A stretch of 63,949 nucleotides of DNA, counting the filler, from Choristocarpus tenellus KU-1152 (taxonomy: Eukaryota > Protista > Phaeophyceae), in NCBI GenBank assembly GCA_964200185.2. It is 9 parts of 9 records of this genome, joined end to end, with 100 filler letters (N's around TTAATTAATTAA, not from the genome) between each part and the next. Parts side by side here need not be neighbours in the genome. Positions count along the whole stretch, not along the records: positions 1 to 27,353 come from CAXNAD020000146.1; 8 more parts are not named here. One strand, written 5' to 3'. The notes under the pieces were generated by a model. It made no database searches, was not told the DNA's origin, and saw only the letters and a program-made list of their open reading frames with translations. Positions within the stretch are counted from its first letter, which is position 1. The number at the start of each line of letters is the position of its first letter. The position numbers and the translations under genes were made by a program. Shown here piece after piece: positions 1 to 21,000 of this stretch.

Positions 1-1405
1 CCTGGTGTAGAACCCCCCCCCCCTCCCAGATACTTTGGGTCTGCTCCTGTGACTATGCACCCTCTCATCTCATCATTATGCATGCGGTTGGCAATCTCTT
101 CACCCACGAAGTACATCCATTGCCATTACTATTAAAATCTACTATGTACATGCTATCACAGGAATTAGCTCCAACAGAACATTGTCATCAAGGATGACTA
201 CACACTTCCGTTAGATTTGTTTATGCACCCCATCATTAGTATAAAGGCAGAGTTGTTTTGTTACAAGGCTCTGGATACTGATTTGTGATTAATATTGACC
301 TGATAAGGCATAATATCTCTGCACCATTTAAAAGTTCTGGTGAAAAACGAAAGTAGTGTGTAGACATCATAGGTACTACAGAGGTGGATATTAGTACTAG
401 TTATGTTGGGCTAGATACAGACTGCTCTAGAATAGGGAATACAAAAACACATCTATTATTATAGTAGTACTTCCTTCTCCATAATGATTTCATGGACATT
501 GCCCGGGAAAGATGTGGGCTTCTGAATATATGTTACCGTGTATAAATGAAAATTAGGTTTGAAGTACTCCCAAGTTGGACCACAGTGCTGGTGGGGGTGA
601 GGCATATACAGGAGCATCACTACCATAGTTGGGCAGGACCATGTCCGAGATGACAATGGATAACTCCTGCTCAAGGTTTGCAACAATTAATAGTTGGAAC
701 AGAATGGTGGATGGCAGACTAAAAACAGGTAAGAACAAACAGCTACACAGACAAGCACTGGGAAAACTTACAGATTACATAGCAATTATATTATAACTAA
801 CACTACCCACAAACTTCTCAGCAATCTTTACTGTGGTGGACAGCTTTGAACGGAGAAACACCTGAAGATCAGCTGCTTCCCAAGTCAAACTATAATTGAC
901 AAACATGCCTCCCCAGGAGTGCTTTTTAAACAACATGAAATCAGGGAGGTCTTGATGGTGACAGGTGAGAGAGATTGGACCAAGGTCAGTAGCTGCCAAC
1001 AAGGAAAAATGCTGGTTGGTAGAGTATGTAATTAGTGTTCTATCATTAACAACTTCTACTCCAGCACCATTCCAGTGATTTAACAAAAAATCCCACACTC
1101 TGAAATAAACAAAGATCTACACTTTCAACAATAAAAAAATGGTTCGGCTATGAAAAATCACCATGACAAACACTGTTCTGATGCTTGACTACAATGATAA
1201 CACATAATGTGTCCAGATATACTAGAGCGACACAATGCCACATGCTACCAACGAGCACACAAGCAGTGAGGAAAAACAAATCCTATTATATTTTTCAAAT
1301 TGTATTAGCTCATCCACATCATGGGTGTGCTACTGATGTATTGGTATGCTCCTTGAAACCAATAATATTTTATTTTCTTCAAAGTCGTGCCAGTTGCCGA
1401 TACAG

Positions 1406-1457
1406 TCATTCCATGGGTGTCCCATGACTCCATTCATATTCTCGGTTCAGGGTGTAC
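1406..1457 (-). CDS. G6PD: G6PD alternative terminal exon 10b, encoding (G)[16 protein letters not shown]; in-frame readthrough extension LYRQLARL* to 1379
   Basis: Acceptor ...cgtgctgtggcag| at 1458-1459, same phase as 10a. TGA at 1408-1406 is followed by CTG TAT CGG CAA CTG GCA CGA CTT TGA. Confidence 0.8.
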
Positions 1458-4400
1458 CTGCCACAGCACGTAAGGGAGTATGTTCCACAGCAGAATTAAC
1501 ATGGTGAGGTTCATGCGTGATGGACTAGCTGGATGTTCCATGCGTCCACTTGTAGTCTCGGTTCAACATGTACCTGCCATAGCATGTCAAGGAGTATGGC
1601 CCACCATAGAAGGCTATGGTCAACATATGGGATGAATAAGACCACTCTAAAGTCACTATCAAGAAATGCTAGCATTTTCAAGGTAACTAAAGTCAAGTTA
1701 AAACCCTCTCACACCAGGAAACATTATCTAGATACAGACATGTTCCTATCTGGTAACTCAAACTACTACGTACCCCATCTTTGCTATCAGTTCATCACTC
1801 TCCGTTGGCCCCCTAGAGCCGTATGCGTATGGCAAAGTGGTTGCTTTCCCTTCCTCAATTTGTTTGAGGAGAGGAGTAAAAATCTTCCATGCTTCCAAAA
1901 GCTCATCACTGCGCACAAATGTAGCTTGTTTGCCCCGCAACACTTCCAGGATGAGGCGGGTATATGCTGCAGGGCTGTTACGGTGGGGAGAAAATAATTG
2001 CAGATACAGGAAGAATGTTGCGTGTGCGGAACAGCCTCAAAAGTACGACGAAGTGACGGGAAGGTAAGCACTGTTAGATATTCCATACTGTTATGCTCAC
2101 TTGTATGCTGTGGGGTAGCGATCGATGTATGTCAGGTCCAGGTCTGACTGCATGGGCTTGCTTTGAAGACCTGGGGCTTTGACATTGGTCTTGTAGTAAA
2201 TACTTTCATTAGGCTGCAACCGCATCACCAACTCATTACGGGGGCAAGGCTGGTCATCGAACATGAAGTTGCTCCCAGGTGTGTCCTTGAACTGGATACG
2301 GACCTGAGAAATACCATGTCAATAGTATATCAATGGCATGTCAATTACCATGTCTGAGAGAAACCTGAGTCAAAGAATCTCAGAACAAACTTCACCATTT
2401 TGTCAGATCTCCAGAATTTTCAAGCTTGACCATCCCAAAGTGACCTGTGTCTCCAAATCATAGTATAATGGAAGTTTATCATATACCTGAAATCTTTTAC
2501 AATATAGTATGCATTATGGCCCTTGTCCTCATTTCTACAATGAAGTGTAACACACCTCAGTCTTGCGCTCATTGAGGGCCTTCCCTGCTTTGAATATGAA
2601 TGGTACTCCTGCCCACCGTGGGTTGTTCACAAACAGGACACATGTTGCAAATGTGGGGCAGTTGGAGTCCTCGGGCACACCATCATCTGTCCAGAAAGAT
2701 TTGTATACAGTGGGCAACAGGGCTATAGTTTGGACAAAGTATGACAGAGTACAAAACACACCAAAACAATTGTCCATACAGCAAGATGGCACTTGAATCA
2801 ACAATGGGAGCGTACTCAAGATGTGTCACTCACCATCCTTGTATCCTGGGTGTTCACCATCCTCACTGGCCACGTACTGGCCTAATACCACATCCTCAAG
2901 GCGAACAGGAGCAGCAGCCTTGAGAACATTAACCTGCACTTGACATATTACAGCGATAAGTTCATATTTACATTTCAAGCCTGAACACGGACAAAGGACT
3001 TGACCTTGAAGGACCTAATCAGCGCAGAGATGACAAAACAAGCTTTGCCGGCTAGTCAAGTAAGGAAACCAAAGACTCCTATTAAAATTATTTTCCATCA
3101 ACATTTCATATTGCAACGAACTCGAGATTTGATCTGATTTTATTTTATTTGATACATCCCTCTTGGAGATTTCTACTATACAGAATATTTGGTTCTTGCC
3201 TGGACCAGCTTGAACCTACCCAACTTTTTTTATAGAACACAAAAAGTGAGTGCTAGTATGTGACTCTCCTTTGATGATCTAAAAATTCCCTCAAAGTCAA
3301 GAGCAGCATAGTCTAACCTTGGCATCACGGAGGAAGTCAGCAGATCCAGTGCCAGACACTCTCACTGGAGGCTCCATGGCAACCAGTGTGAAGACCTGAA
3401 TGCAAAAATTCCAAAAGCAAATAGCAAGACAAGATTAGACATAGATTCGTCTGTATTGCCAGATGTTTAACACAGGCTCGCAGAATGCAAGATTAACCCA
3501 TGGCAATACAACAAAACTTGAGTCAAATACCTGAATGAGATGGTTCTGAATAACGTCACGTATGATGCCATAATTATCAAAGTATCCACCACGTCCTTCA
3601 GTTCCAAAGTCTTCCTTGAAGGTGAACTGGACACTTTGGATAAAGTTACGGTTCCATGTGGGTTCGAACATCAAGTTTGAGAAACGCAACACCACCATGT
3701 TTTGTGTCATCTCTTTCCCCAGGTAGTGATCAATACGGTAGATGAACTTCTCCGTGAAGTACTCTCCAAGTCCGCTAGTGAGCTGACAGCAGAAAATGAT
3801 TAAGTCCGGAATACAGGTGGAAGTGAATATGTTGAGGAACAGAACTTGTTACAGACACAATTTGTTTGCATGACCAAAAAAATATCAATTGTGTTTACTT
3901 GCAGCTGTATGGTTTTGGGGAATGCCTAATAGTCTTTACTTGCCCATAATGGTCAGATAGCAAGCATCTGGTACAAGTTTTCTAGTAGTTCAGTTCACTG
4001 TCCGAGTAAAAAGACACCAATCAGATCTAACACTTAATATACCCAGAGAGCTAGAAAAACTATAAGGGTGGAAAGGGATGGTACACACCTCAAGTGCTGA
4101 ATCATAGTCATGCCCAAAGGGTTTCTCCACAATAAGGCGTGTGAAACCTGTTGAACTAATCCCTGTCTGCTTAATGGAGGATGCAGTATCCAGGAACACA
4201 TTTGGTGGAATTGCAAAATAAAACACACGATTGGCAACACCTCCAAGGCCAGACTTTTCCTCACGAATCTCGAGGTCTTTGATCATGGCCCCCATGTCCT
4301 CAGCTGAACCATAGCCGCCTGAAAGTGTTGGTTACAAGATATTTCATTTCCATGTTGTCAATTGATGAAATAGATCTCAATACCTCTGTACACGCACAGG

Positions 4401-5459
4401 TACTGGGCCTGCAAGTTCGTCCAGGCACAAATGATAATGATCTTTTTACTTTCAGATACACCAAAACAAATCCAAGGACCAATAAGAGCAATTAGTGTTG
4501 TCGATTGATCACATACCTCCAGGAAGGGTGGCAAGGGGTGGCTGTCTTATTTTAGTCTATGAAGGCAATTACCGTTCCTATCAAAGATCAAAGATAAACT
4601 ACCTGAAGTATAAACAACGCTTTGAGGGTCTACGTCGATTATTAGTGGGTAGATTTAGGTATTAAAAAGGACTCGGATCTTCATGAACACATATAAAGCG
4701 CCATAAAATATTACGGACACCGTCATACTCGAGATGATGTAGAGGTACACAGCAGCCAACTGACAAATATAAAAGTTTATAGCCCACATCTAATTACCAA
4801 CCCGCCTCTCCTTAAGTCTAAGGTCCACCTGCACGGTAGTGGACCAACTTCAAAAACTCTTCAACTTTGGGGTCAGCTTCTTTGGAGAGGTAAGGCCGGA
4901 GCTTTTCATGGAGTTGATTGTCCGTGATTTTTGATCGCGCATAGCCACAAATGATCACGTGCGGTGGAAGGAAGTCGTGGCAGAAGAGCTCAAATAGCGC
5001 AGGAAATGTCTGCAAGCAAGTGGAGGAGTCGAGCAGCAGGGTTCATAATATCATATTAGAAAATCAGGACACACAGGACATGATTGCAATCCGATACTAT
5101 TACCACTCTGAATGCCACCACCTCTACACAAAAACAACTCGCTATACCACTGTCAGGGGGTGGATCATATCAAAGCCTACATGCTCAGGTCTGTCTGTGA
5201 AATAGACTTGGGTCACGTTCAAACAATGCAAGACACCAGGCGGACAAAGCCCACCAAAAAGACCTCTATCCATAAAAGAAAGTTGCTCAGGGACCACAGA
5301 GTCAAACTGAATCAATGTATGGCGAATGTCATGACAATTGTGCGCAGAAGCAGAAGCCACCTTCTTTTTTGCCAGATCTCCACTGGCTCCAACGACTACC
5401 ACAGACAATGAACTGTGAAGGTATTCGCAGGAGTGATACTTGGATACGTTTTCAGTCAT
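1406..5459 (-). CDS. G6PD: Glucose-6-phosphate 1-dehydrogenase, cytosolic type, 10 exons with two alternative last exons
   Basis: Manual GT-AG exon model: 5459-5361, 5009-4829, 4318-4089, 3782-3531, 3395-3318, 2933-2834, 2686-2556, 2303-2101, 1974-1774, then 1573-1525 (10a) or 1457-1406 (10b). Phases are consistent. Motifs [72 protein letters not shown] and FVRSDEL..AW.IFTPLL are present. No N-terminal presequence. Confidence 0.97.
1525..1573 (-). CDS. G6PD: G6PD alternative terminal exon 10a, encoding (G)[15 protein letters not shown]
   Basis: Acceptor ...catgctatggcag| at 1574-1575, phase-compatible with the donor GG|GTACGT after 1774; stop TAG at 1527-1525. Confidence 0.8.
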
Positions 5460-6361
5460 GACCCCTTTTCTCTCAATTGCGGTTGGCTGGCCCACGTCTG
5501 CTGTTACCAGATTTCCCAGTAAGACTAACTAGTTGAGGCCTGTGAAGTACCAAGTTTTGAACTTGAGACTAAATGGCGAATTTGTCTTCTCAAGGTTGGA
5601 TTGTTGATGAAATATTGGTCGGAGTATTGTTGTGGAGTGGTTAGATGGTAGAATAATATTGTAGTAGTTGAGTACAATAATATTGTAGTAGTTGAGTACA
5701 AACCATAGTACTTTTAATCAAAACTTAGTCATTTCCACCTGATACCCTCATGCAGATACATTTTGCGGGAAATTGGAAGTATTATTATAGTAGTTATCAT
5801 TCAAAATTCTCGTTCAGATCATTTTCACGGGAAATTGTAAGTGTTTATTATAGGTTTGGTAGGGTTGCAACCCAAATTATGATTTGAAAAAAACAAAAAC
5901 ATGAACACAATATTTCCGAACCAACAGTCCGAGTCATGCATCTGGAGACTATTGCTCCGACCCATCATCAAGGATAATCTCAGCAAGTACATTTATCAAG
6001 GAGTTGCAATCAATACAGCTCAAGCGAGACACAAACACACATCATCTCCAAAATCTCGTCGACTCAAAGAAGAGCCTATAACTTATCTTCCAGGTAACTT
6101 CGCTTTTACTTTACGTCTTGGCTGGGGTGATTTCAAGATTTTCTTTGTTGTGTTATGGTATATAACAATCTGCTGCAAGAGGAGGGAATAGCTCTTTACT
6201 CATGGTGGCTTCATAAGATATCCTTGAACTCTCTTGGACACAGACAAAGGCTTGAAAGCTCAAGCAGAGGTCATGCTCATGTCCATTAGTCAGACAAAAC
6301 TAACTCAAACTTCTTCGTCAACGACGCCCTTCACGTAGGACCCAGGAGCCAGTTCAACAAG
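5460..6361. promoter_or_regulatory. Putative bidirectional promoter and 5'UTRs shared by G6PD and 6PGD
   Basis: 902 bp between divergent ATGs. Contains a tandem duplication of AATAATATTGTAGTAGTTGAGTAC (about 5652-5700) and two copies of a CGGGAAATTG.AAGT..TTATTATAG motif (about 5761-5790 and 5822-5853). Confidence 0.6.
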
Positions 6362-9300
6362 ATGGAGGCTTTGTCTGATGTTGGCTTGTATGGCCTTGCT
6401 GTCATGGGACAGAACTTTGCTCTTAACATGGCCAGCCACGGATTCCGCGTCTCCGTGTGTAATCGGTCTCCTGAGAAGGTCGATGCAACCGTTGAGCGTG
6501 CCAAGGAAGAGGGTGATCTCCCTCTTGTGGGATTCAAGGACCCTAAGGAATTTGTGATGTCCCTCTCGACTCCCCGCAAGATTATTATCCTGGTTCAGGC
6601 CGGCAAGCCTGTGGATGCCACAATCGATGTCCTGTCTGCGCACATGGAGGTGAGATATACGAGTTCTACTGCCTTGACTGTTTTCTGTACACAGGAGTTC
6701 CAATTGTCGGCATTCTGCAGCGTAGTGCAGTGGTCGAATATTGCGCTGGATTTGCCTACTTCTGCCACGATTGGGCTCCAGTATGTGTTGTCTTACAGAG
6801 GAAGGCGATGAGATGTTAATATCCAACCAATAGTACAACTCTCCTGACTATTGCTCCTTCACGGTAATGAACTATGTGCATCACTCTTCAGCCTGGTGAT
6901 GTTCTTGTAGACGGAGGTAATGAGTGGTTTCCCAACTCACAGCGCCGGGGAGAGGAACTTGAGGCCAAGTCCATCCTCTTCGTGGGCATGGGTATCTCTG
7001 GTGGGGAGGAAGGAGCCCGTAATGGCCCATCCCTCATGCCGGGTGGGCCAAAGAAAGCATTTGATCTCCTGGAGCCCATCATCACGAAGTGTGCTGCCCA
7101 GGTGTGTGTATACAATGGAATAGTGCAAGCATCCTGTCTGCCTCTGGTGAAGTTTTGTACCACTCTGTTGTTTTTCTGAATTCTTAAGAGTACATGTGGC
7201 ATGTTGGGAGGAGTGTTATTCCTTTGCGAACTTCTGATCAGTTGAATGTGTTGCACATATAAATAGGCATAAAATTTAAAAGAGTTAGCAAGCTATTTCC
7301 AAACCCTCACACAAGCACAACCCCGCTTAACAGTAAAAAGTTTCATGAATGTACTAGGTGGACGATGGACCATGCACAACATATCTTGGTTCTATTGGCT
7401 CTGGAAACTATGTGAAGATGGTCCACAATGGCATTGAATATGGCGACATGCAACTCATTGCTGAGGTGTGTACAGAAATATAAATGGTCAGGATTATGCT
7501 TGCTCATTGTGCCTTAAGATTTTTTTTTTGCAAAAATCCTTCCTCGGGAGCGAAAAAAGTGCTTTTGGCAAGAGTAGTAAGTAGTAGTACTTGTGGAGGA
7601 CATTAGTCAATTTTAGTGTTTTTAGTGCTGTACGTTTGGCAACACCTTTCCTATTTCCCTTACCTTCCAGGTTTACGATGTCTTGAAGAATGTGGCAGGG
7701 TTGTCAAACGAAGAGCTGGCGTCAACGTTTGAGAGCTGGAACACAGGAGAGCTGCAGGTAAGCTCAGGAGTGGTTCCTGCAATTAAGTATTGTCTAAAGA
7801 TGATAATGCAAAGGTCAAGAATCACTTTGACATCACAGGCACTTGAAAACAGAAATGGAGTCTTCTATTGTGGACCTAACCTCTAGCCTCTATTGGGTGA
7901 TTTGGAATGCTGCAGAGCTTCCTTGTGGAGATCACTGCATCAATTTTTGGGAAGAAAGATGACAAGACAGATGAAGGTTATGTTGTGGACAAGATCCTTG
8001 ATAAGACAGGTGAATTTGGATGCATCCAGAAGTATATTGTATGTCTGATGTGGAAAATGATTGCCGTTCCATTCAATATCTTCAATCCTGGAACAATAGC
8101 CTTCACCTACTGACACAAATCGCAGTCTACCTGCATAGGTCTGACACAAAGGTGAACATCCTTTGTAGTGGTCACAGTTGAACGACACAACATAATTCTA
8201 CTGTAATTGTAGAAGTAGAAAGATTTATGAGTTGGCTGGGTGGATTGCCTAGACATGCTCAAAGAGTTCCGATGTGCGCTTGTTGTAGGTATGAAGGGGA
8301 CAGGGCGCTGGACTGTACAGGAAGCAGCAGAGCGAAGTACTGCTGCTCCCACTATGGCAGCTGCCCTGGATGCTAGGTACCTAAGTGGTAGGAAGGACGA
8401 GAGGATCAGGGCAGCCACAGTACTTTCTGGACCCTCAGAAATTCCTGCTGTTGCCAAGGAGCAGCTGGTTACGGACCTGAAGGCTGCTCTATACTGCTCT
8501 AAAGTCTGCTCTTATGCACAGGTTTGGATAGGTATCAGCATTGCTGAGTTTGGAGTGTGGTATTTGTTATTGTTACTAAAACGAAAAGAGGGGAGGGGAG
8601 GGGGCAGCAAAGCGATTCCAGTCTGTTTTGTTCTGTTGATTGAAATGTAGAGGTCTATTCATGTCACAAAATTGCTCATTGCACTCAAGTATAAGGACTG
8701 TTGAAGAATACCACTGCTGTACAGCAAGCTGATTAGTAATTTATTTATCTAGTTCAATAATCTGCTTTGTTTTTTGTAACTGATTTTGTGTGTGACTGCA
8801 CTCTTGTTCTCTTTGCTTGGTTGACAGGGCATGTGTCTGATCAAGAGCGCATCAGAGCACTTTGAGTGGGGTGTGGACCTTGGTGAATGTGCACGTATCT
8901 GGAAGGGAGGTTGCATCATCCGGGCAGCCTTCCTTGATGACATCAAGAGGGCATACAAGATTGATTCAAGCCTATCCAATATGCTAGTCGATCCATTTTT
9001 TGCTTCCCAACTTTTGGAGCGCCAGGCTGCATGGAGGAGGGTGGTTTCCCTCTGCGTGGCAAGTGGCATTGCTGCTCCAGCCATGACAGCATCTTTGTCG
9101 TACTTTGACTCCTACCGTCGAGCTCGCCTACCAGCCAACCTGGTGCAGGTGATGAGGCCAGAGTGTTTTGTAGTGCTGATGTAAACACACAGATTTGTTG
9201 TTTGTGCATAGAGGTGTGATGTGTTGTTAAATTGGCTCTGTGATATGTGATTGGGACTGTCTACTGAAGCTCCTTCTATGCTGACCTTGACCATCTTCTG

Positions 9301-15047: not shown

Positions 15048-18000
15048 TTACATCCGCTGTGGTGCATCAAGCTGTCTTGGTCCACTCCCATATTGATCTA
15101 CCCATTCTCGAAGATCATGCTGGGCAAACTGTTGTGAACTAGGGAACATCTCCTCATCAGCAATGAAGCACTGAAGGATGGCAGTAATGGCTGTACCATA
15201 CACCTCTGTAAACATCTTGGAGATGAAGAAGGAAATAACCATCACCACCAAAGTTGGCCCAACCAAGGAGTACAGATCGTCTTCAATATTGGACTCCATT
15301 ATCCAGTATGTCAGTGCTCCTGTTGTAAACATCACAAAGAGCTACAGAGGGGGCAGAATGGGGCAAGGAGTAAATGTCTGAACAGATATCTCTCTGTGGT
15401 AGCTTGAACATGAATGCTTGATGCTATATTGTGTCTATAAAAGTGTACACAAAAGCACATGTAACACATGTCACGCGTGGTAAAACTCAAGTCCAAAAGA
15501 TACACAACATATAGCGAAGTATTCTCACACACATTTGGCAACGTGCAATGAAAGTGGAATCTTGTCCAAGGGGTGTAGTTCATATGGATTTTTACTGCGC
15601 ATCACTAACAATACACTGGTAGAATAACAGCGACAAAAATATCATGTTACAGTCTGTGCAACAAAACCAAAGAAGAGTTGGGAGTACAAGGGTTCTCACC
15701 CACAACACATGTACTCACCGTCATGATCACCAACAAAAACTCTGAGAGTAGGGAAACGGCTCCTACACGCGCCAAATTCCTTGCAATCAGCCAGAAAGCA
15801 TTCTTGGCTGAAGTACAGAAGCTTGTAGAGAAAATAGCTGTCTGAGGAACATCAACATCATTACAGGTGTGTCACAGAAGAGGGCAGTGTTTGGTGATTA
15901 TATAGTCCTTTCACACAAACTTGTTGACATGGCATGACATGACAAAGCATCAAGGCATTACAGGTTTCTACAAGTGACCTCGACAGGGAAGTCAGCAACC
16001 AACCTCACACGGAATACACAACAAGTGGTGTATATGGTAGTCAATGCATATACCAGTAAGTATCAAACAACAGCATGGACTTGCACCTGAACATAAGCAT
16101 TTCTGTTGATGAAGCGCATGCATTTTTCCAGGCACCAGAAGCAGCACATGCAGCAACATGATATTGCCTCCGCAACCTTATTCTGGGATGCCTTGGCCTT
16201 CTTGTTGATGTAGGACAGGACAGCTTCAATCATCTGCAAAGGTGAGTCATCCACCAGCAGAGGTACATACATAAATTGTGGTGCAAAACCCTCAGTTCCA
16301 TCAACTGACAACAATATGTAAGCAGTCAATAATCAATGCATGTGCAACTAAAGTGAAAAGTACCAGCCATAGTGTGAGTTCCTACTCCTTCTCGTAGCAC
16401 CAATGGGACCATATGCAAATGTGAAACTGCAATAAATGTCATGAATTATTTTATCCTCATGGTCCAAGGGGTGATAAAAAAGTTCTCATTAGAGAGGGAT
16501 AGTGCCACTATTACTACAACAGGAATTCTATTGATAGTACTTGCCTGTATGATGGCAATAATGAGGGCACCAAATGCAGCTGTACCCATGTGGTAGAACA
16601 AAGTGTCCTTGATCGAGCCAATCACCGTGCCAGAACCAACTGAGCTCTTGTTTCGGGTAAAGTACCACTTGCTAGAAGCCAAGGCAACAACGATTTCTCC
16701 AACAGCTCCAATGAAATTCAACGACCAAAAGAGGCAAAACAGAAGGAACCACAGACGGTACTCCACCTCTGTTGAGAAGTCAAACTCCTACAATGATTGA
16801 GGGGCAGCAACACACAAGCAGAAGATGGTGAGCACCACATAGTACATAATAGTGACCTGTACTGATGGGGATTATCACACAGCAGTAGCCACAAGTAGAG
16901 ATACACTAATGTATCAACTTATGCAAGCTTTCAGATCCTGTATGCTGAGGTTGTAGAAGCATGTACTGAATCAAGGTTCCACAACCATGCAAATGCATCT
17001 GAAAAACGAATCAATATTACCACTCATCCTGCAAGTGTTAATACCATTAATTATGATAAGGAATGTATTTACCATGCAGTATGAATAGCACTACAGAGTA
17101 TGAGCAGGTATGCACATTGTGCATCACTCTACTAATTATTTAATTCATACAAATACTTCAAAGGTAGAGTACAGAACATGAAGTTGAAGTTCTATGCATG
17201 CAACATAATCTCAAAAGTAAATTCCCATTCATACTTCAACATCCTGGATAATGAGGTATAATGGTGATACACACACCAAAGAGTCACTGTAAGGTCAGGG
17301 TTACTTTTGATCAGTGTGACATCATCAAGGTAGGGTTTGGGTCAATCACGGTCCAAAATGTTTCTTTCCATCATGATCTACCTCAAGATAAAATTTGAAA
17401 TCCTGTGCTTGAAGTCCAGCTGGATACAACACATAACATGAAAATTAGAACTACTAACTGCTAACTACTCTCTAGCACTAATAATGGGAGGGTCACCTTG
17501 TATGAAAGATCAAGTTCAGAGCCATTGAAGTCAACAGTATAATTGACAACCTCCAAATCACCCAAGCTTGCAGTGTAGGCAACATAGTATGCCCACACTA
17601 GCATGAACAGGATGAGTCCCACCAGTTGAATAACTGGCCATAGAAGAATGAGAGGCATGGCAGTGATCACACGCCCAGCCTCCTTGATGACTCCAATAGC
17701 CAGTTCCACACGTTTGCGCATGAAGCACATGAAACAGACCCACAAGAATGCCAGAACCTGCGCACCATAGGGCAAGAAATTAATAATTAATTTGGTGAGA
17801 TCTACAGTATGGATAAGAATTATTCCTTGAGCACCACACAAGTGACTTTTTTTTTGCATGTGTCATATAAATGTGATGTATCTAGTGACAAGTGCTGTAA
17901 GACACATACATTGGTCAAATCGAAAACTGAGGTGGAATATTGGAACTGTCTCAGCATCAAAGTACTGTTCCATTCCTCTTACAAAAAATGATTTTCTTTT

Positions 18001-21000
18001 CATCAGGCCTTCAACCACCATAACTTGAATTTAAAGTCACCAGTAATTGACACATTTGAAGTGGTTTGTTGGTCTTGATGAGGTACACAACAAGGCTGTG
18101 TCAACATGAAGAAATCAACATTTGAATTCCTATGCAATATCCAACTTAGTATCAACTGTGCATTGAATTGGTTGATTGCTAACCATAACAATTACAAGAC
18201 ACGTCACTCACCCAGAACAGAGCTGCAAACACATAGGCAGCAGTGACAAATGCCTAGTAGGTGGAGTAGAACATAGCAGAAAGAAAGTGGTACCCATGCA
18301 GTAAGTTGAGGAGGGAAGCGGGCAGTTGGTGTTACAGATTTGGGAAAAGGATAGGAAAAATTACATTCACGTTGAGATATGGCTATTGAAGAGGTTCAAG
18401 AGCATATATAATGAAGGAAACAGTATAGGGAGACTGGCTTGAACAATACCAACAGAAGAAGATTAAGAAGCGGAAGACGCATGAAACGAATGCACTGATG
18501 GGCTAACACTAGGGAAACTCTGCAGCATGTATTATTGTTATCCAGTAGAGTCACATGGTCCTCTTGAGTACTCGATAATCGAGAGGATCAGCAAAAATTC
18601 GATGAATAATTGATTCAAATTTGTAAACACGGTATCAACTGAGACTGTATTTCATCAAAACATTCTCTTGAAATTTCCTCAAAAGGATTTTCTCACCTGG
18701 TCTTTCACTCCCTCCTCATCCCAATCCGCAGCAACAGAATACATACCAATCCCAAGCCCCACCAATGCAACGAGCACCAGTGAGATGCAAGACCACACCA
18801 GTGCTGTCACCAGGAAAGGTAATCGCATCAAGTAGATGTAGACAAACCCAAGAACAAGGGAAACAGCAAATCCAAAACCAAAGATGTAGTCTCTGGCAGT
18901 GATCATATCGGCAATGAATTCACTTGCGTAAGATGCAAGGTCTGTATCCCTGAATTCAGACCACACAGTTGCATTCTTGAACACACAATAGTTGATGACT
19001 GCACAGAATACAAGCAACAGACACAAGCATACAAACAGCAATGGTCACAGCCAGTTAGAATCTTGGAAAGGGTCGATGGATTCAAGGCTGCTGAGATGAA
19101 AGCACAGATTGGTGAAGCTCTATAATATTTTCTAATCCTTCACAATATAAGTAAGTAGCACCTATATGAACATGTTTTTATATCCTTCTGTTTGCTTGTG
19201 CAATTAAACAGCACACTCTACACAAAACTGCACAAAAATTGAGGCTACAGGTTTAGTAACAACTCACTGTCATAGCTCTCATACTGGTACATACAGTATC
19301 CAGCAGCGACCCGCTCTTCAATGGTGAGTGTGATGTCATCATCCTCACGGCAAGCATACAGAGTGCTGAAGGAAATGAAGGATATGAAAAACAATTTGTG
19401 TCAGGTATGACTTGTGTCAGGTATGAATTGCAGAAAAATATTCAAAGTGAAGCTGGAGACTGGTAATGGTAAGCAGGGTACTAACACTACAAAAACAATT
19501 TTGTAAGTGCTCACACTCACCTTTGCTATTGATGCAAACAAGCTTGAGGGCAATGTTCTCCTTTCATGTACTATTGATAGTCACAGGTTACAATGATGTA
19601 TGTGTTCCTAACTATGGTATTGACACTTCAAAATGCCTTAAAACCTATCTAATAACATCATGTCTGCTCTGATTGTCCAATGCAAAATGGAACCTACATC
19701 AAGAAGTCATCATCTAAAAAAAAAGGGCTCTTGTCACTTGTGTCCCTACTTAGAAGGTGAAACCCATCAAAATCTGCACAGCATCCAGGTGCTAAAACCC
19801 ATTGAAATATAACAAAAAGAAAGATAACTTTAGGTATAAAAGCTCACAATAGCACAGCGCACAGATCAGGGGAGTGACCACTGTGAATACAACCCTCATT
19901 GCCATGGTTGTGATCTTGCAATCCACCAGCTCTCCTTACCACCTAACACAATACTCTGTCTCACCTCAGGTCAGTTGTATCAGGACAGCCATCCACACAC
20001 ACCCCTGAACCTCCCACATTTGCATAATACAACTGCTCAGTATTCTCAAAACCATCAGTATACCCACAAAGGTTGCCATTGTAATCAATTGGGGCAAGAA
20101 GCTTGTCAACATCACCCTGAAACAAAGGAAAGGGAGCAACAATAAAGCAAGAAAATAAGAATTAATTCATACATAGAAATCGGACAATGTGTTGAACATA
20201 CACTTCAAAGCACATAAAACCCACCCACACTCATAAAACTGTCATTGTAGACGTCGATATAGCACATGTGATGCAGTATTTGTCAGCTACTTAAATATAC
20301 TATTAATAATACAACTTAGTATCAGTCCAACACTATGCTTGCCAACTAAACGTAAAGGAAAACTGGGCAGGAGATCGTAAGTGTTGGGCACTGCGTACGC
20401 GGTTGGGTAGATATTACAAGCTAATGGAAGATCAAAATATTCCCCGCAAATATGCAGCTACTGCTTACGTTAGAGAGGAACTCCAGTCAGTGTAAGCAAT
20501 AAAAAAATGAAGCATAACTGTTCTTTGATAAATATACATTTTAGTAAGCATCCTACAATTCTGTCAATATTGTATGCAGAGTATTGGACAGTAGTGCTGC
20601 TGTTAGACACCTTTTGGTACACCCATACACATCATACAGGCAGTGAGGAAATGCAACCTGAACTAGGGGATTTCAAACTAACAATGAGCTACACACAAAA
20701 AATGCGGTCCAATACCTTGTGGAAGTTCTGGGTAACATGCAATCTATGCTTGAACAGAGCAAACAGCGCTGTGTTGTCTAGTGTAATGGATAAGCTCTGG
20801 AGTTAACATGGTGGCCCTTTATATAAACAAAATATTAATATTACCCAAAAAACAAGGATGCATTGTAGTCAGTGACACAAGGTAACCTACAATCAGCATA
20901 GCATTGATCAAAGAAATTAGATAATCCTACTACTACTACATTTACATCAAATCCCATTAAATTTGAGGGTAACACAAATGCCACCAGTCATGTATAATGC

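What the first reader, a model, noticed from the sequence alone, without database searches (positions are those of the whole stretch)
1379..1457. Cryptic peroxisomal targeting signal (-ARL) hidden behind a leaky TGA-CTG stop in G6PD exon 10b
Seen: exon 10b reads ...CCC ATG GAA TGA CTG TAT CGG CAA CTG GCA CGA CTT TGA, i.e. ...GTPME*LYRQLARL*. Established: -ARL fits the canonical PTS1 consensus [SAC][KRH][LM], and basic residues upstream favour Pex5 binding. UGA followed by CUR (best CUAG) is the known context for functional readthrough that creates peroxisomal isoforms of fungal PGK and of animal MDH1 and LDHB. Inference: a fraction of G6PD is imported into peroxisomes to regenerate NADPH there. 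I am not aware of this having been described for a stramenopile G6PD. A short extension, a readthrough-type context and a PTS1 exactly at the next stop are unlikely together by chance, though CUG is a weaker context than CUA.
Basis: partly seen in the sequence, partly recalled or inferred. Interest (0 to 1): 0.92.

Follow-up and report, generated by a model that had tools for sequence, protein, structure and literature searches.

The report
Hidden peroxisome tag on brown-algal G6PD
The glucose-6-phosphate dehydrogenase gene of the brown alga Choristocarpus tenellus, like that of every other brown alga I could check, carries a peroxisome-import signal just behind a leaky UGA stop codon, which suggests that a small share of this NADPH-making enzyme enters peroxisomes, a mechanism so far shown only in fungi and animals.

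Summary

- **Organism and gene.** The window is Choristocarpus tenellus, an early-branching brown alga. Its apparently single-copy G6PD gene lies on the minus strand (5459-1379).
- **Duplicated last exon.** The last exon is tandemly duplicated, and transcript contigs show exon 9 spliced to both copies. Exon 10a ends ...HGTSS-TAG with no signal behind it. Exon 10b (1457-1379) ends ...GTPME-TGA-CTG and continues in frame as LYRQLARL-TGA.
- **Conservation.** The other brown-algal G6PD 3' ends I read include Ectocarpus sp. 4, Ascophyllum nodosum and six unnamed types, one of them about 88% identical to the Ectocarpus end. All have a TGA stop followed by C (CTN in all but the Ectocarpus type). All have an in-frame extension of 7-13 codons that cannot be aligned between taxa yet ends in SKL or SRL at the next stop.
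- **Controls.** Neither other reading frame gives such a signal. About 24 of 27 G6PDs from other protists show none, and shuffled flanks give one in 0.25-0.37% of trials.
- **Relatives.** Xanthophyte-like relatives encode -SKL directly.
- **Context.** The genome encodes peroxins. The public protein model misses both terminal exons.

The mechanism (UGA-CU readthrough exposing a PTS1) is known from fungi and animals. I found no report of it for stramenopiles or for G6PD. Readthrough and import remain to be measured.

The parts
1379..5459 (-). G6PD gene, from the ATG at 5459-5457 to the second stop at 1381-1379; about 10 exons
   Evidence: Pfam G6PD_N and G6PD_C match the exon ORFs. tblastn of the public model P0361 against the window gives the exon series. 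This is the only G6PD_C locus found in the 164-Mb assembly.
1774..1974 (-). Exon 9 (...[19 protein letters not shown]...ELIAKMG), with donor GG|gtacgt at 1774|1773
   Evidence: RNA contig joints 2102|1974, 1774|1573 and 1774|1457; sequence.
1525..1573 (-). Terminal exon 10a: (G)[15 protein letters not shown] then TAG (1527-1525). The next in-frame stop is 25 codons on, with no PTS1 before it.
   Evidence: The joint 1774->1573 has word depth 816, and that contig runs on unspliced through 1569-1429.
1458..1495 (-). Duplicated intron end and acceptor in front of 10b (its copy in front of 10a is 1574-1611; 76% identical)
   Evidence: Direct repeat of 82 nt, spacing 116; alignment; identity count.
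1406..1457 (-). Coding part of terminal exon 10b: (G)[16 protein letters not shown] plus the first stop TGA (1408-1406)
   Evidence: The joint 1774->1457 has word depth 619.
1403..1408 (-). Readthrough-type stop context TGA CTG
   Evidence: Sequence. UGA followed by CU is the core readthrough element in fungi and human cells (PMC4207609). All brown-algal relatives have TGA followed by C, and CTN in all but the Ectocarpus type.
1382..1405 (-). In-frame extension LYRQLARL; the PTS1 tripeptide ARL is encoded at 1390-1382
   Evidence: ARL fits the (S/A/C)-(K/R/H)-(L/M) consensus and is listed for a putative peroxisomal protein of the diatom Phaeodactylum tricornutum (PMC3178647).
1379..1381 (-). 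Second stop (TGA), which ends the extension directly after the PTS1
408..1378 (-). Long 3' UTR shared by both isoforms (approximate lower end)
   Evidence: X3 contig of 1051 nt starts at 1458 and runs colinear past 1201. The lower end is inferred from the contig length. No Pfam hit on the ORFs in it and no Rfam or SECIS match.

Best explanation
The apparently single-copy G6PD gene of Choristocarpus tenellus produces two mRNAs by using either copy of a tandemly duplicated terminal exon.

Isoform A (exon 10a) stops at UAG-U and has nothing useful behind the stop, so its product stays in the cytosol. Isoform B (exon 10b) stops at UGA-CUG. On a small share of ribosomes a near-cognate tRNA reads the UGA, and translation runs on for eight codons to a second UGA. 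[quoted passage not shown] The PTS1 receptor Pex5 would then bring the extended enzyme into peroxisomes. Unextended subunits might be carried in with it as oligomers, as proposed for plant G6PD. Inside, the enzyme would regenerate NADPH.

Shown here: the sequence, the use of both acceptors in RNA, the conservation of the module across brown algae, and the presence of peroxins. Inferred: that readthrough occurs, its rate, the import, and the role in NADPH supply.
For: 1. Both joints, exon 9->10a and exon 9->10b, occur in RNA-derived contigs with GT..AG ends, at word depths 816 and 619.

2. Every other brown-algal G6PD 3' end I could read has a TGA stop followed by C and an in-frame extension ending in a PTS1 at the next stop. 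All of these second stops are also TGA.
- L007: CTC, LSKRSKL
- L008: CTC, ...SQRSKL (13 codons)
- L010: CTG, ...WRSRL
- L011: CAG, ...GRSKL
- L012/L013: CTG, ...VYSKL
- L014-L016: CTA G, ...KQSRL
- Ectocarpus sp. 4, L063: CAG, ...GRSKL
- Ascophyllum nodosum, L064: CTG, ...KQSRL

3. The extensions are 7-13 codons long and have no common sequence apart from the leading codon and the last three residues. Within the PTS1 codons the taxa differ synonymously or within the consensus: Ser TCA/TCC/TCG, Lys AAG/AAA, Arg AGG/CGA, Leu CTG/CTT/TTG. The two substitutions between the Ectocarpus-type extensions L011 and L063 are both synonymous.

4. Controls. There are 0 PTS1s in 14 out-of-frame readings. Shuffled flanks give 0.25-0.37%. 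Among 27 G6PD 3' ends of other protists from metagenomes, one has TGA CTG with ...RSKL, one has a direct -AKL, and the rest have nothing canonical.

5. Xanthophyte-like relatives L005 and L006 encode -SKL directly, and Tribonema minus ends -AKI. A peroxisome-targeted G6PD therefore fits this wider lineage.

6. A short tree places the unnamed sequences with Ectocarpus and Ascophyllum, with Choristocarpus as their sister.

7. The genome encodes Pex14 and Pex2/10/12-type peroxins.

8. UGA-CU is an experimentally defined readthrough core that yields PTS1 isoforms in fungi and human cells (PMC4207609).

9. There is no AG dinucleotide between the TGA and the PTS1 codons in the window, and the RNA contig is colinear there. 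Splicing therefore cannot bypass this stop.
Against: - There is no direct evidence of readthrough, of the extended protein or of its location. No raw RNA reads, ribosome profiling or proteome data were available.
- The window's tripeptide is ARL, whereas all other brown algae have S[KR]L, and its extension is among the shortest.
- CUG is a weaker context than CUA(G) in the systems that have been tested, and no stimulatory RNA structure follows the stop (z = -0.82).
- The next enzymes of the pathway show no PTS1 in this genome. 6PGDH ends GEL-TGA-AGT-TGA. 6-phosphogluconolactonase ends QVL-TAG. A complete peroxisomal oxidative pentose phosphate branch is therefore not supported.
- Contig word depths are only a rough guide to isoform ratio.
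- Some of the relatives are close to one another (L011 and L063 are 88% identical), so they are fewer than nine independent observations.
Confidence: 0.8

Rival explanations
1. Chance: the stretch behind the stop is ordinary 3' UTR, and the ARL before the next stop means nothing.
For: A single case has a prior of about 0.25%, and a scan of many windows will meet such cases. The pN/pS ratio between 10a and 10b is only suggestive (0.38, p = 0.087).
Against: All 8 other distinct brown-algal sequences have a PTS1 in the same frame at the next stop, although their extensions cannot be aligned and differ in length. None has one in the other frames. Most G6PDs from other lineages lack it.
Confidence: 0.03
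2. The extension is joined to the reading frame by an alternative splice that removes the stop, as in fungal GAPDH and PGK or Candida GND1, and not by readthrough.
For: Alternative splicing does act at this very exon. Several relatives have AG dinucleotides shortly after the TGA, for example TGACAG in Ectocarpus and TGACTGCAG in L012.
Against: The window has no AG between the TGA and the ARL codons, and the transcript contig is colinear from 1458 past 1201. The invariant TGA followed by C (never TAA or TAG) in all brown algae is what selection for leakiness predicts, not what a splice bypass predicts. Contigs can, however, drop rare isoforms.
Confidence: 0.06
3. Readthrough happens and the extension is under selection, but for a purpose other than peroxisomal import, such as control of stability or oligomerisation.
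For: No localisation data exist. 6PGDH and 6PGL lack a PTS1 in this genome.
Against: The only conserved features of the extension are its last three residues, which always fit the PTS1 consensus, and their position directly at the stop. Xanthophyte-like relatives carry -SKL as their normal end.
Confidence: 0.05
4. The UGA is decoded by rule, as selenocysteine or through a reassigned code, so the long form is the main product.
For: The stop is UGA in every species, and the 3' UTR is about 1 kb long.
Against: No SECIS or other Rfam match was found in 1-2000. The extension itself ends at UGA in every species.
Confidence: 0.01
5. Sub-claim only: the choice between 10a and 10b is neutral splicing noise after a recent 116-bp duplication and does not regulate targeting.
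For: Both acceptors are near-identical copies, and the two protein tails are similar. No other brown alga I read has an intron or a duplication at this point.
Against: The copies are 24-29% diverged yet both keep the conserved residues (Y, LNR, Y-W, HGT) and an open frame. 10a has changed to a TAG stop and lost the extension. Both forms are abundant.
Confidence: 0.4

Closest known systems
Readthrough-derived peroxisomal isoforms at UGA-CU(A): Ustilago maydis PGK, TPI, Rpe1 and Art1; human LDHB and MDH1; Drosophila NADP-IDH (Freitag et al. 2012; Stiebler et al. 2014, PMC4207609)
   Same: A UGA stop followed by CU, a short in-frame extension, a PTS1 exactly at the next stop, phylogenetic conservation of both context and PTS1, and a cytosolic enzyme of central carbon or redox metabolism.
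   Different: A different eukaryotic supergroup (stramenopiles, brown algae) and a different enzyme (G6PD). In this species the module sits in one of two alternatively used terminal exons. Nothing has been tested experimentally here.
Peroxisomal isoforms made by alternative splicing: U. maydis GAPDH, Aspergillus nidulans PGK, Candida albicans 6PGDH Gnd1 (reviewed in PMC3798809)
   Same: Alternative 3' exon use decides whether an mRNA can give a PTS1-bearing enzyme. A pentose phosphate pathway enzyme is involved.
   Different: In those cases the alternative exon encodes the PTS1 in the open frame. Here a UGA still stands between the frame and the PTS1, so splicing only selects the leaky or the tight terminator.
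Dual cytosolic and peroxisomal G6PD of plants: Arabidopsis G6PD5/6 with the weak signal -PTL, grass isoforms with an added PTS1, and G6PD1 (PMC12125578)
   Same: Same enzyme and the same apparent need: keep most of it in the cytosol and send a little to peroxisomes. Import as dimers has been proposed.
   Different: Plants reach the balance with a weak terminal signal or separate genes, not with a stop codon in front of a strong signal.
G6PD with a directly encoded PTS1 in related ochrophytes: xanthophyte-like contigs L005 and L006 (-SKL), Tribonema minus (-AKI), the diatom Trieres chinensis (-SKM)
   Same: Orthologous enzyme in related algae, with a PTS1-type end.
   Different: No stop codon in front of the signal, so all copies would carry it. 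These are sequence observations only.

Membership tests
Readthrough-derived cryptic PTS1 (Freitag/Stiebler type) | [quoted passage not shown] | tested here: met
   TGA CTG at 1408-1403. The motif definition comes from PMC4207609.
Readthrough-derived cryptic PTS1 (Freitag/Stiebler type) | Short in-frame extension ending in a PTS1 tripeptide directly at the next stop | tested here: met
   The extension is LYRQLARL followed by TGA, and ARL fits (S/A/C)-(K/R/H)-(L/M) (consensus from PMC3178647).
Readthrough-derived cryptic PTS1 (Freitag/Stiebler type) | Phylogenetic conservation of both the stop context and the PTS1 | tested here: met
   Eight other distinct brown-algal sequences, including the named Ectocarpus sp. 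4 and Ascophyllum nodosum, have TGA followed by C(T) and S[KR]L at the next stop.
Readthrough-derived cryptic PTS1 (Freitag/Stiebler type) | The mRNA carrying the module is made | tested here: met
   The exon 9->10b joint occurs in RNA-derived contigs of run X3.
Readthrough-derived cryptic PTS1 (Freitag/Stiebler type) | Measurable readthrough of the stop | not testable with these tools
   This needs a reporter assay, ribosome profiling or mass spectrometry. Only assembled contigs of three runs were available.
Readthrough-derived cryptic PTS1 (Freitag/Stiebler type) | Pex5-dependent import of the extended form into peroxisomes | not testable with these tools
   The genome has Pex14_N and Pex2/Pex12-type genes. 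I did not search for Pex5 itself, and no localisation data exist.
Glucose-6-phosphate dehydrogenase | G6PD_N (NAD(P)-binding) and G6PD_C domains in order | tested here: met
   PF00479 and PF02781 score above their cut-offs on six exon ORFs. The public model P0361 matches.
PTS1 isoform made by alternative splicing alone (fungal GAPDH/PGK, Candida Gnd1 type) | The alternative exon puts the PTS1 into the open reading frame with no intervening stop | tested here: not met
   Both isoforms exist, but in 10b the TGA at 1408-1406 precedes the PTS1, and no AG acceptor lies between them.
Selenoprotein (UGA read as Sec) | SECIS element in the 3' UTR | tested here: not met
   No Rfam match at E <= 1 in 1-2000 on either strand.

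The most novel reading that the evidence does not exclude
Brown algae as a class send part of their only cytosolic G6PD into peroxisomes by programmed UGA-C(U) readthrough. This would be the first such case outside fungi and animals, and it would imply that the leaky UGA-CU context is an ancient property of eukaryotic termination that different lineages have recruited repeatedly. In Choristocarpus a lineage-specific duplication of the terminal exon adds a splicing switch between a leaky-stop-plus-PTS1 terminator and a tight terminator. That would let the cell regulate the peroxisomal share at the RNA level.
Probability: 0.55. Interest if true: 0.8.

Novelty: new variant of a known kind. Interest (0 to 1): 0.72.

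Why it matters
**Reach of the mechanism.** Readthrough-exposed peroxisomal signals are established for a few enzymes in fungi and animals. A case conserved across a whole class of stramenopiles would show that the UGA-CU leak works, and is used, far more widely among eukaryotes.

**Brown-algal metabolism.** It would also give brown-algal peroxisomes, which are barely studied, their own source of NADPH. That bears on how they degrade unsaturated fatty acids and cope with oxidative stress.

**Annotation.** Gene predictors cannot see such isoforms, and here the public model even misses both terminal exons. Predicted peroxisomal proteomes of these algae are therefore incomplete. A simple scan for TGA-CT plus an in-frame PTS1 across the new brown-algal genomes should uncover more cases.

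**The exon pair.** The pair of terminal exons in Choristocarpus offers a natural experiment on how the peroxisomal share of an enzyme can be tuned.

Tried and rejected
- **Selenocysteine.** A search for a SECIS element or any other RNA family in 1-2000 found nothing.
- **RNA structure.** No stimulatory structure lies behind the stop; the fold is no better than shuffles (z = -0.82).
- **6PGDH.** I looked for a second duplicated exon or cryptic PTS1 on the neighbouring 6PGDH gene. There is none: it ends GEL-TGA-AGT-TGA and has no repeat.
- **6PGL.** The 6-phosphogluconolactonase of the same genome ends QVL-TAG and has no PTS1. The gene model is my own reading and its last exon is not verified.
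- **Selection on 10a versus 10b.** pN/pS is 0.38, but with 15 codons this is not significant (p = 0.087).
- **Chrysoparadoxa australica as an outgroup.** The public model stops at a splice donor. My guess at the next exon ends LHA, so this is inconclusive.
- **RNA runs.** No run on record as RNA was offered, and only contigs could be laid. Isoform ratio, poly(A) site and rare splice forms could therefore not be measured.
- **Joined model.** I did not search or fold a joined spliced model or a protein read through the stop. Exons were searched separately by reference, and for full-length work I used the public model P0361, whose last four residues come from the intron.
- **Complex prediction.** I did not attempt a complex with Pex5, because the extended tail has no reference and is under 30 residues.
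- **Mistyped call.** One call failed on a mistyped coordinate order and was repeated.

Full report
**What is in the sequence**

The finding lies on the minus strand. Read that way, 1456-1379 is sixteen sense codons ([16 protein letters not shown]), TGA at 1408-1406, then CTG TAT CGG CAA CTG GCA CGA CTT (L Y R Q L A R L), and a second TGA at 1381-1379.

The stretch is the end of a G6PD gene that starts at ATG 5459. Six exon ORFs match Pfam G6PD_N and G6PD_C above their cut-offs. It is the only G6PD_C locus found in the 164-Mb assembly.

**Which organism**

A public protein labelled Choristocarpus tenellus (P0361, 496 aa) sits on a contig of 27,353 bases, which is the length of my piece. It equals my exon reading residue for residue.

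That public model ends ...AKMGYVVV. The annotators ran on into the intron after 1774 and missed the true terminal exons. Transcript contigs give no support for that ending, because nothing covers 1591-1740.

**A duplicated terminal exon, both copies in use**

An 82-nt direct repeat with 116-nt spacing covers the intron end, the acceptor and the coding part.
- The upstream copy, 10a (1573-1525), reads (G)[15 protein letters not shown] and stops at TAG.
- The downstream copy, 10b (1457-1379), is the finding.

Three public runs hold the stretch. Two behave as DNA and show no differing letter; one of them may be the assembly's source. The third (X3) holds spliced contigs and so comes from RNA. Its contigs show:
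- the exon 8/9 joint (2102|1974);
- a joint 1774->1573 (word depth 816), whose contig continues unspliced through 1569-1429;
- a joint 1774->1457 (word depth 619).

All the introns have GT..AG ends. The 54-nt junction contig matches 10b and not 10a, so it is not a repeat artefact.

The gene therefore makes two abundant mRNAs. In isoform A, exon 10b is merely part of the 3' UTR. In isoform B it is the coding end. Behind 10a's TAG the frame runs 25 codons to a stop with no targeting signal.

The two copies differ at 29% of coding positions yet keep the conserved residues. pN/pS is 0.38, which with 15 codons is only suggestive (p = 0.087).

**Is the ARL more than chance?**

For one sequence alone, shuffles of the flank give a [SAC][KRH][LM] tripeptide at the next in-frame stop in 0.25% of trials. 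The decisive evidence is comparative.

Searching with exon 9 by reference found short gene calls on genomic contigs of related algae. I fetched the DNA behind their stops and added two named genomes. Every one has TGA, then C, then a short in-frame extension ending in a canonical PTS1 at the next stop:

| Locus | Codon after TGA | Extension |
|---|---|---|
| L007 | CTC | LSKRSKL |
| L008 | CTC | 13 codons ending RSKL |
| L010 | CTG | 11 codons ending RSRL |
| L011 | CAG | 12 codons ending RSKL |
| Ectocarpus sp. 4 (L063) | CAG | 12 codons ending RSKL |
| L012/L013 | CTG | 11 codons ending YSKL |
| L014-L016 | CTA G | 12 codons ending QSRL |
| Ascophyllum nodosum (L064) | CTG | 11 codons ending QSRL |

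Three further points support selection on the translated extension.
- The extensions share no sequence beyond the leading codon and the last three residues, and their lengths range from 7 to 13 codons.
- Within the three PTS1 codons the taxa differ only synonymously or within the consensus (TCA/TCC/TCG; AAG/AAA/AGG/CGA; CTG/CTT/TTG).
- The two substitutions between the Ectocarpus-type pair are both synonymous.

The other two frames give 0 signals in 14 readings.

As a wider control I read 27 G6PD 3' ends of other protists from metagenome contigs. One has TGA CTG and an extension ending RSKL (L039). One has a direct -AKL. The rest have nothing canonical.

A tree of the C-terminal 84 columns has modest support. 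It puts the unnamed sequences with Ectocarpus and Ascophyllum, Choristocarpus as their sister (89/80), and Tribonema next. This matches the accepted position of Choristocarpus at the base of the brown algae, which I state from my own knowledge. The module therefore seems to date from before the split of the living brown-algal orders that were sampled.

**Relatives outside the brown algae**

- Two metagenome contigs whose G6PD is nearly identical to that of Tribonema minus in the compared stretch end directly in -SKL with TAA or TAG stops.
- Tribonema itself ends -AKI, and the diatom Trieres chinensis ends -SKM.
- Chrysoparadoxa was inconclusive.
- An unnamed G6PD from a Logan transcript contig, 59% identical to exon 9 (L009), has TGA AGC and no signal.

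**Mechanism**

UGA followed by CU is the experimentally defined core for efficient readthrough in Ustilago and in human cells, where it produces PTS1-bearing isoforms. An A at the next position raises the rate (PMC4207609).

The consensus (S/A/C)-(K/R/H)-(L/M) and an ARL example in a stramenopile come from work on the diatom Phaeodactylum (PMC3178647). The genome has Pex14 and Pex2/10/12-type genes.

Three alternatives can be set aside for the window.
- Splicing bypass: there is no AG between the TGA and the ARL codons, and the transcript contig is colinear there.
- Selenocysteine: there is no SECIS element.
- A structure-driven mechanism: nothing folds behind the stop.

I conclude that a small share of ribosomes on isoform B reads through the UGA and makes a G6PD with a PTS1. 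The rate is unknown. From my own knowledge of LDHB and MDH1 I would expect the low percent range. Import and the NADPH role are inferred.

One reservation is that neither the adjacent 6PGDH gene nor the 6PGL gene shows a PTS1. The peroxisome may therefore get only the first step of the pathway.

**Comparison with what is known**

The thing works like the fungal and animal readthrough isoforms, and it meets every sequence-level criterion of that group. The functional criteria could not be tested.

It is not a member of the splicing-only group, because a stop still precedes the signal.

It parallels plant G6PD5/6, where a weak signal keeps most of the enzyme cytosolic (PMC12125578).

Full-text searches found no paper combining readthrough, PTS1 and stramenopiles, diatoms, brown algae or oomycetes, and none on G6PD readthrough. 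The brown-algal genome paper that includes this species mentions neither peroxisomes nor readthrough nor G6PD. The library lacks most subscription journals, so this is absence within what could be searched.

I did not search or fold a joined spliced model or a protein read through the stop. Exons were searched separately by reference.

**Verdict**

The mechanism is of a known kind but appears in a new lineage and on a new enzyme, with an added splicing choice between a leaky and a tight terminator in this species.

Noticed in passing
window 5459-6362 (the G6PD ATG at 5459 on the minus strand, the 6PGDH ATG at 6362 on the plus strand); also L065:1-596 and 1501-6034: G6PD and 6-phosphogluconate dehydrogenase lie head to head about 900 bp apart, which suggests a shared bidirectional promoter for the two NADPH-producing steps. 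The same arrangement is seen in Chrysoparadoxa australica, so the pair seems conserved beyond the brown algae.
   Followed up: partly
window 1761-1776 (minus strand): The public protein model for this gene (P0361, Choristocarpus tenellus) ends ...GYVVV because it reads into the intron. It misses both real terminal exons 10a and 10b, and transcript contigs do not cover that intron.
   Followed up: yes
L005:6487-6885 and L006:6556-6723: Xanthophyte-like G6PD genes on two JGI metagenome contigs end directly in -SKL. Tribonema minus ends -AKI and the diatom Trieres chinensis ends -SKM. Directly encoded PTS1-type ends on G6PD may be scattered through the ochrophytes.
   Followed up: partly
L039 (match 1524-1715, stop context just downstream): A G+C-rich (60%) G6PD from a metagenome contig, with a quite different C-terminal tail, also has TGA CTG followed by LLVHRSKL and a stop. 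It may be an independent second origin of the same module in another protist lineage.
   Followed up: no
window 408-1378 (minus strand): The transcript contig runs about 1 kb beyond the second stop. This long 3' UTR holds a 107-113-codon ORF (775-1116) with no Pfam match. Whether it is UTR or a separate overlapping transcript is open.
   Followed up: partly
window 15048-19041 (minus strand): A multi-exon gene for a choline-transporter-like membrane protein (Pfam Choline_transpo on two exon ORFs).
   Followed up: no
L066 (G000:C9779:3384-5777, minus strand): The genome's 6-phosphogluconolactonase appears to end ...AAQVL-TAG, with no PTS1 and none behind the stop. A possible splice donor lies just before the end, so the last exon is not certain.
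   Followed up: partly
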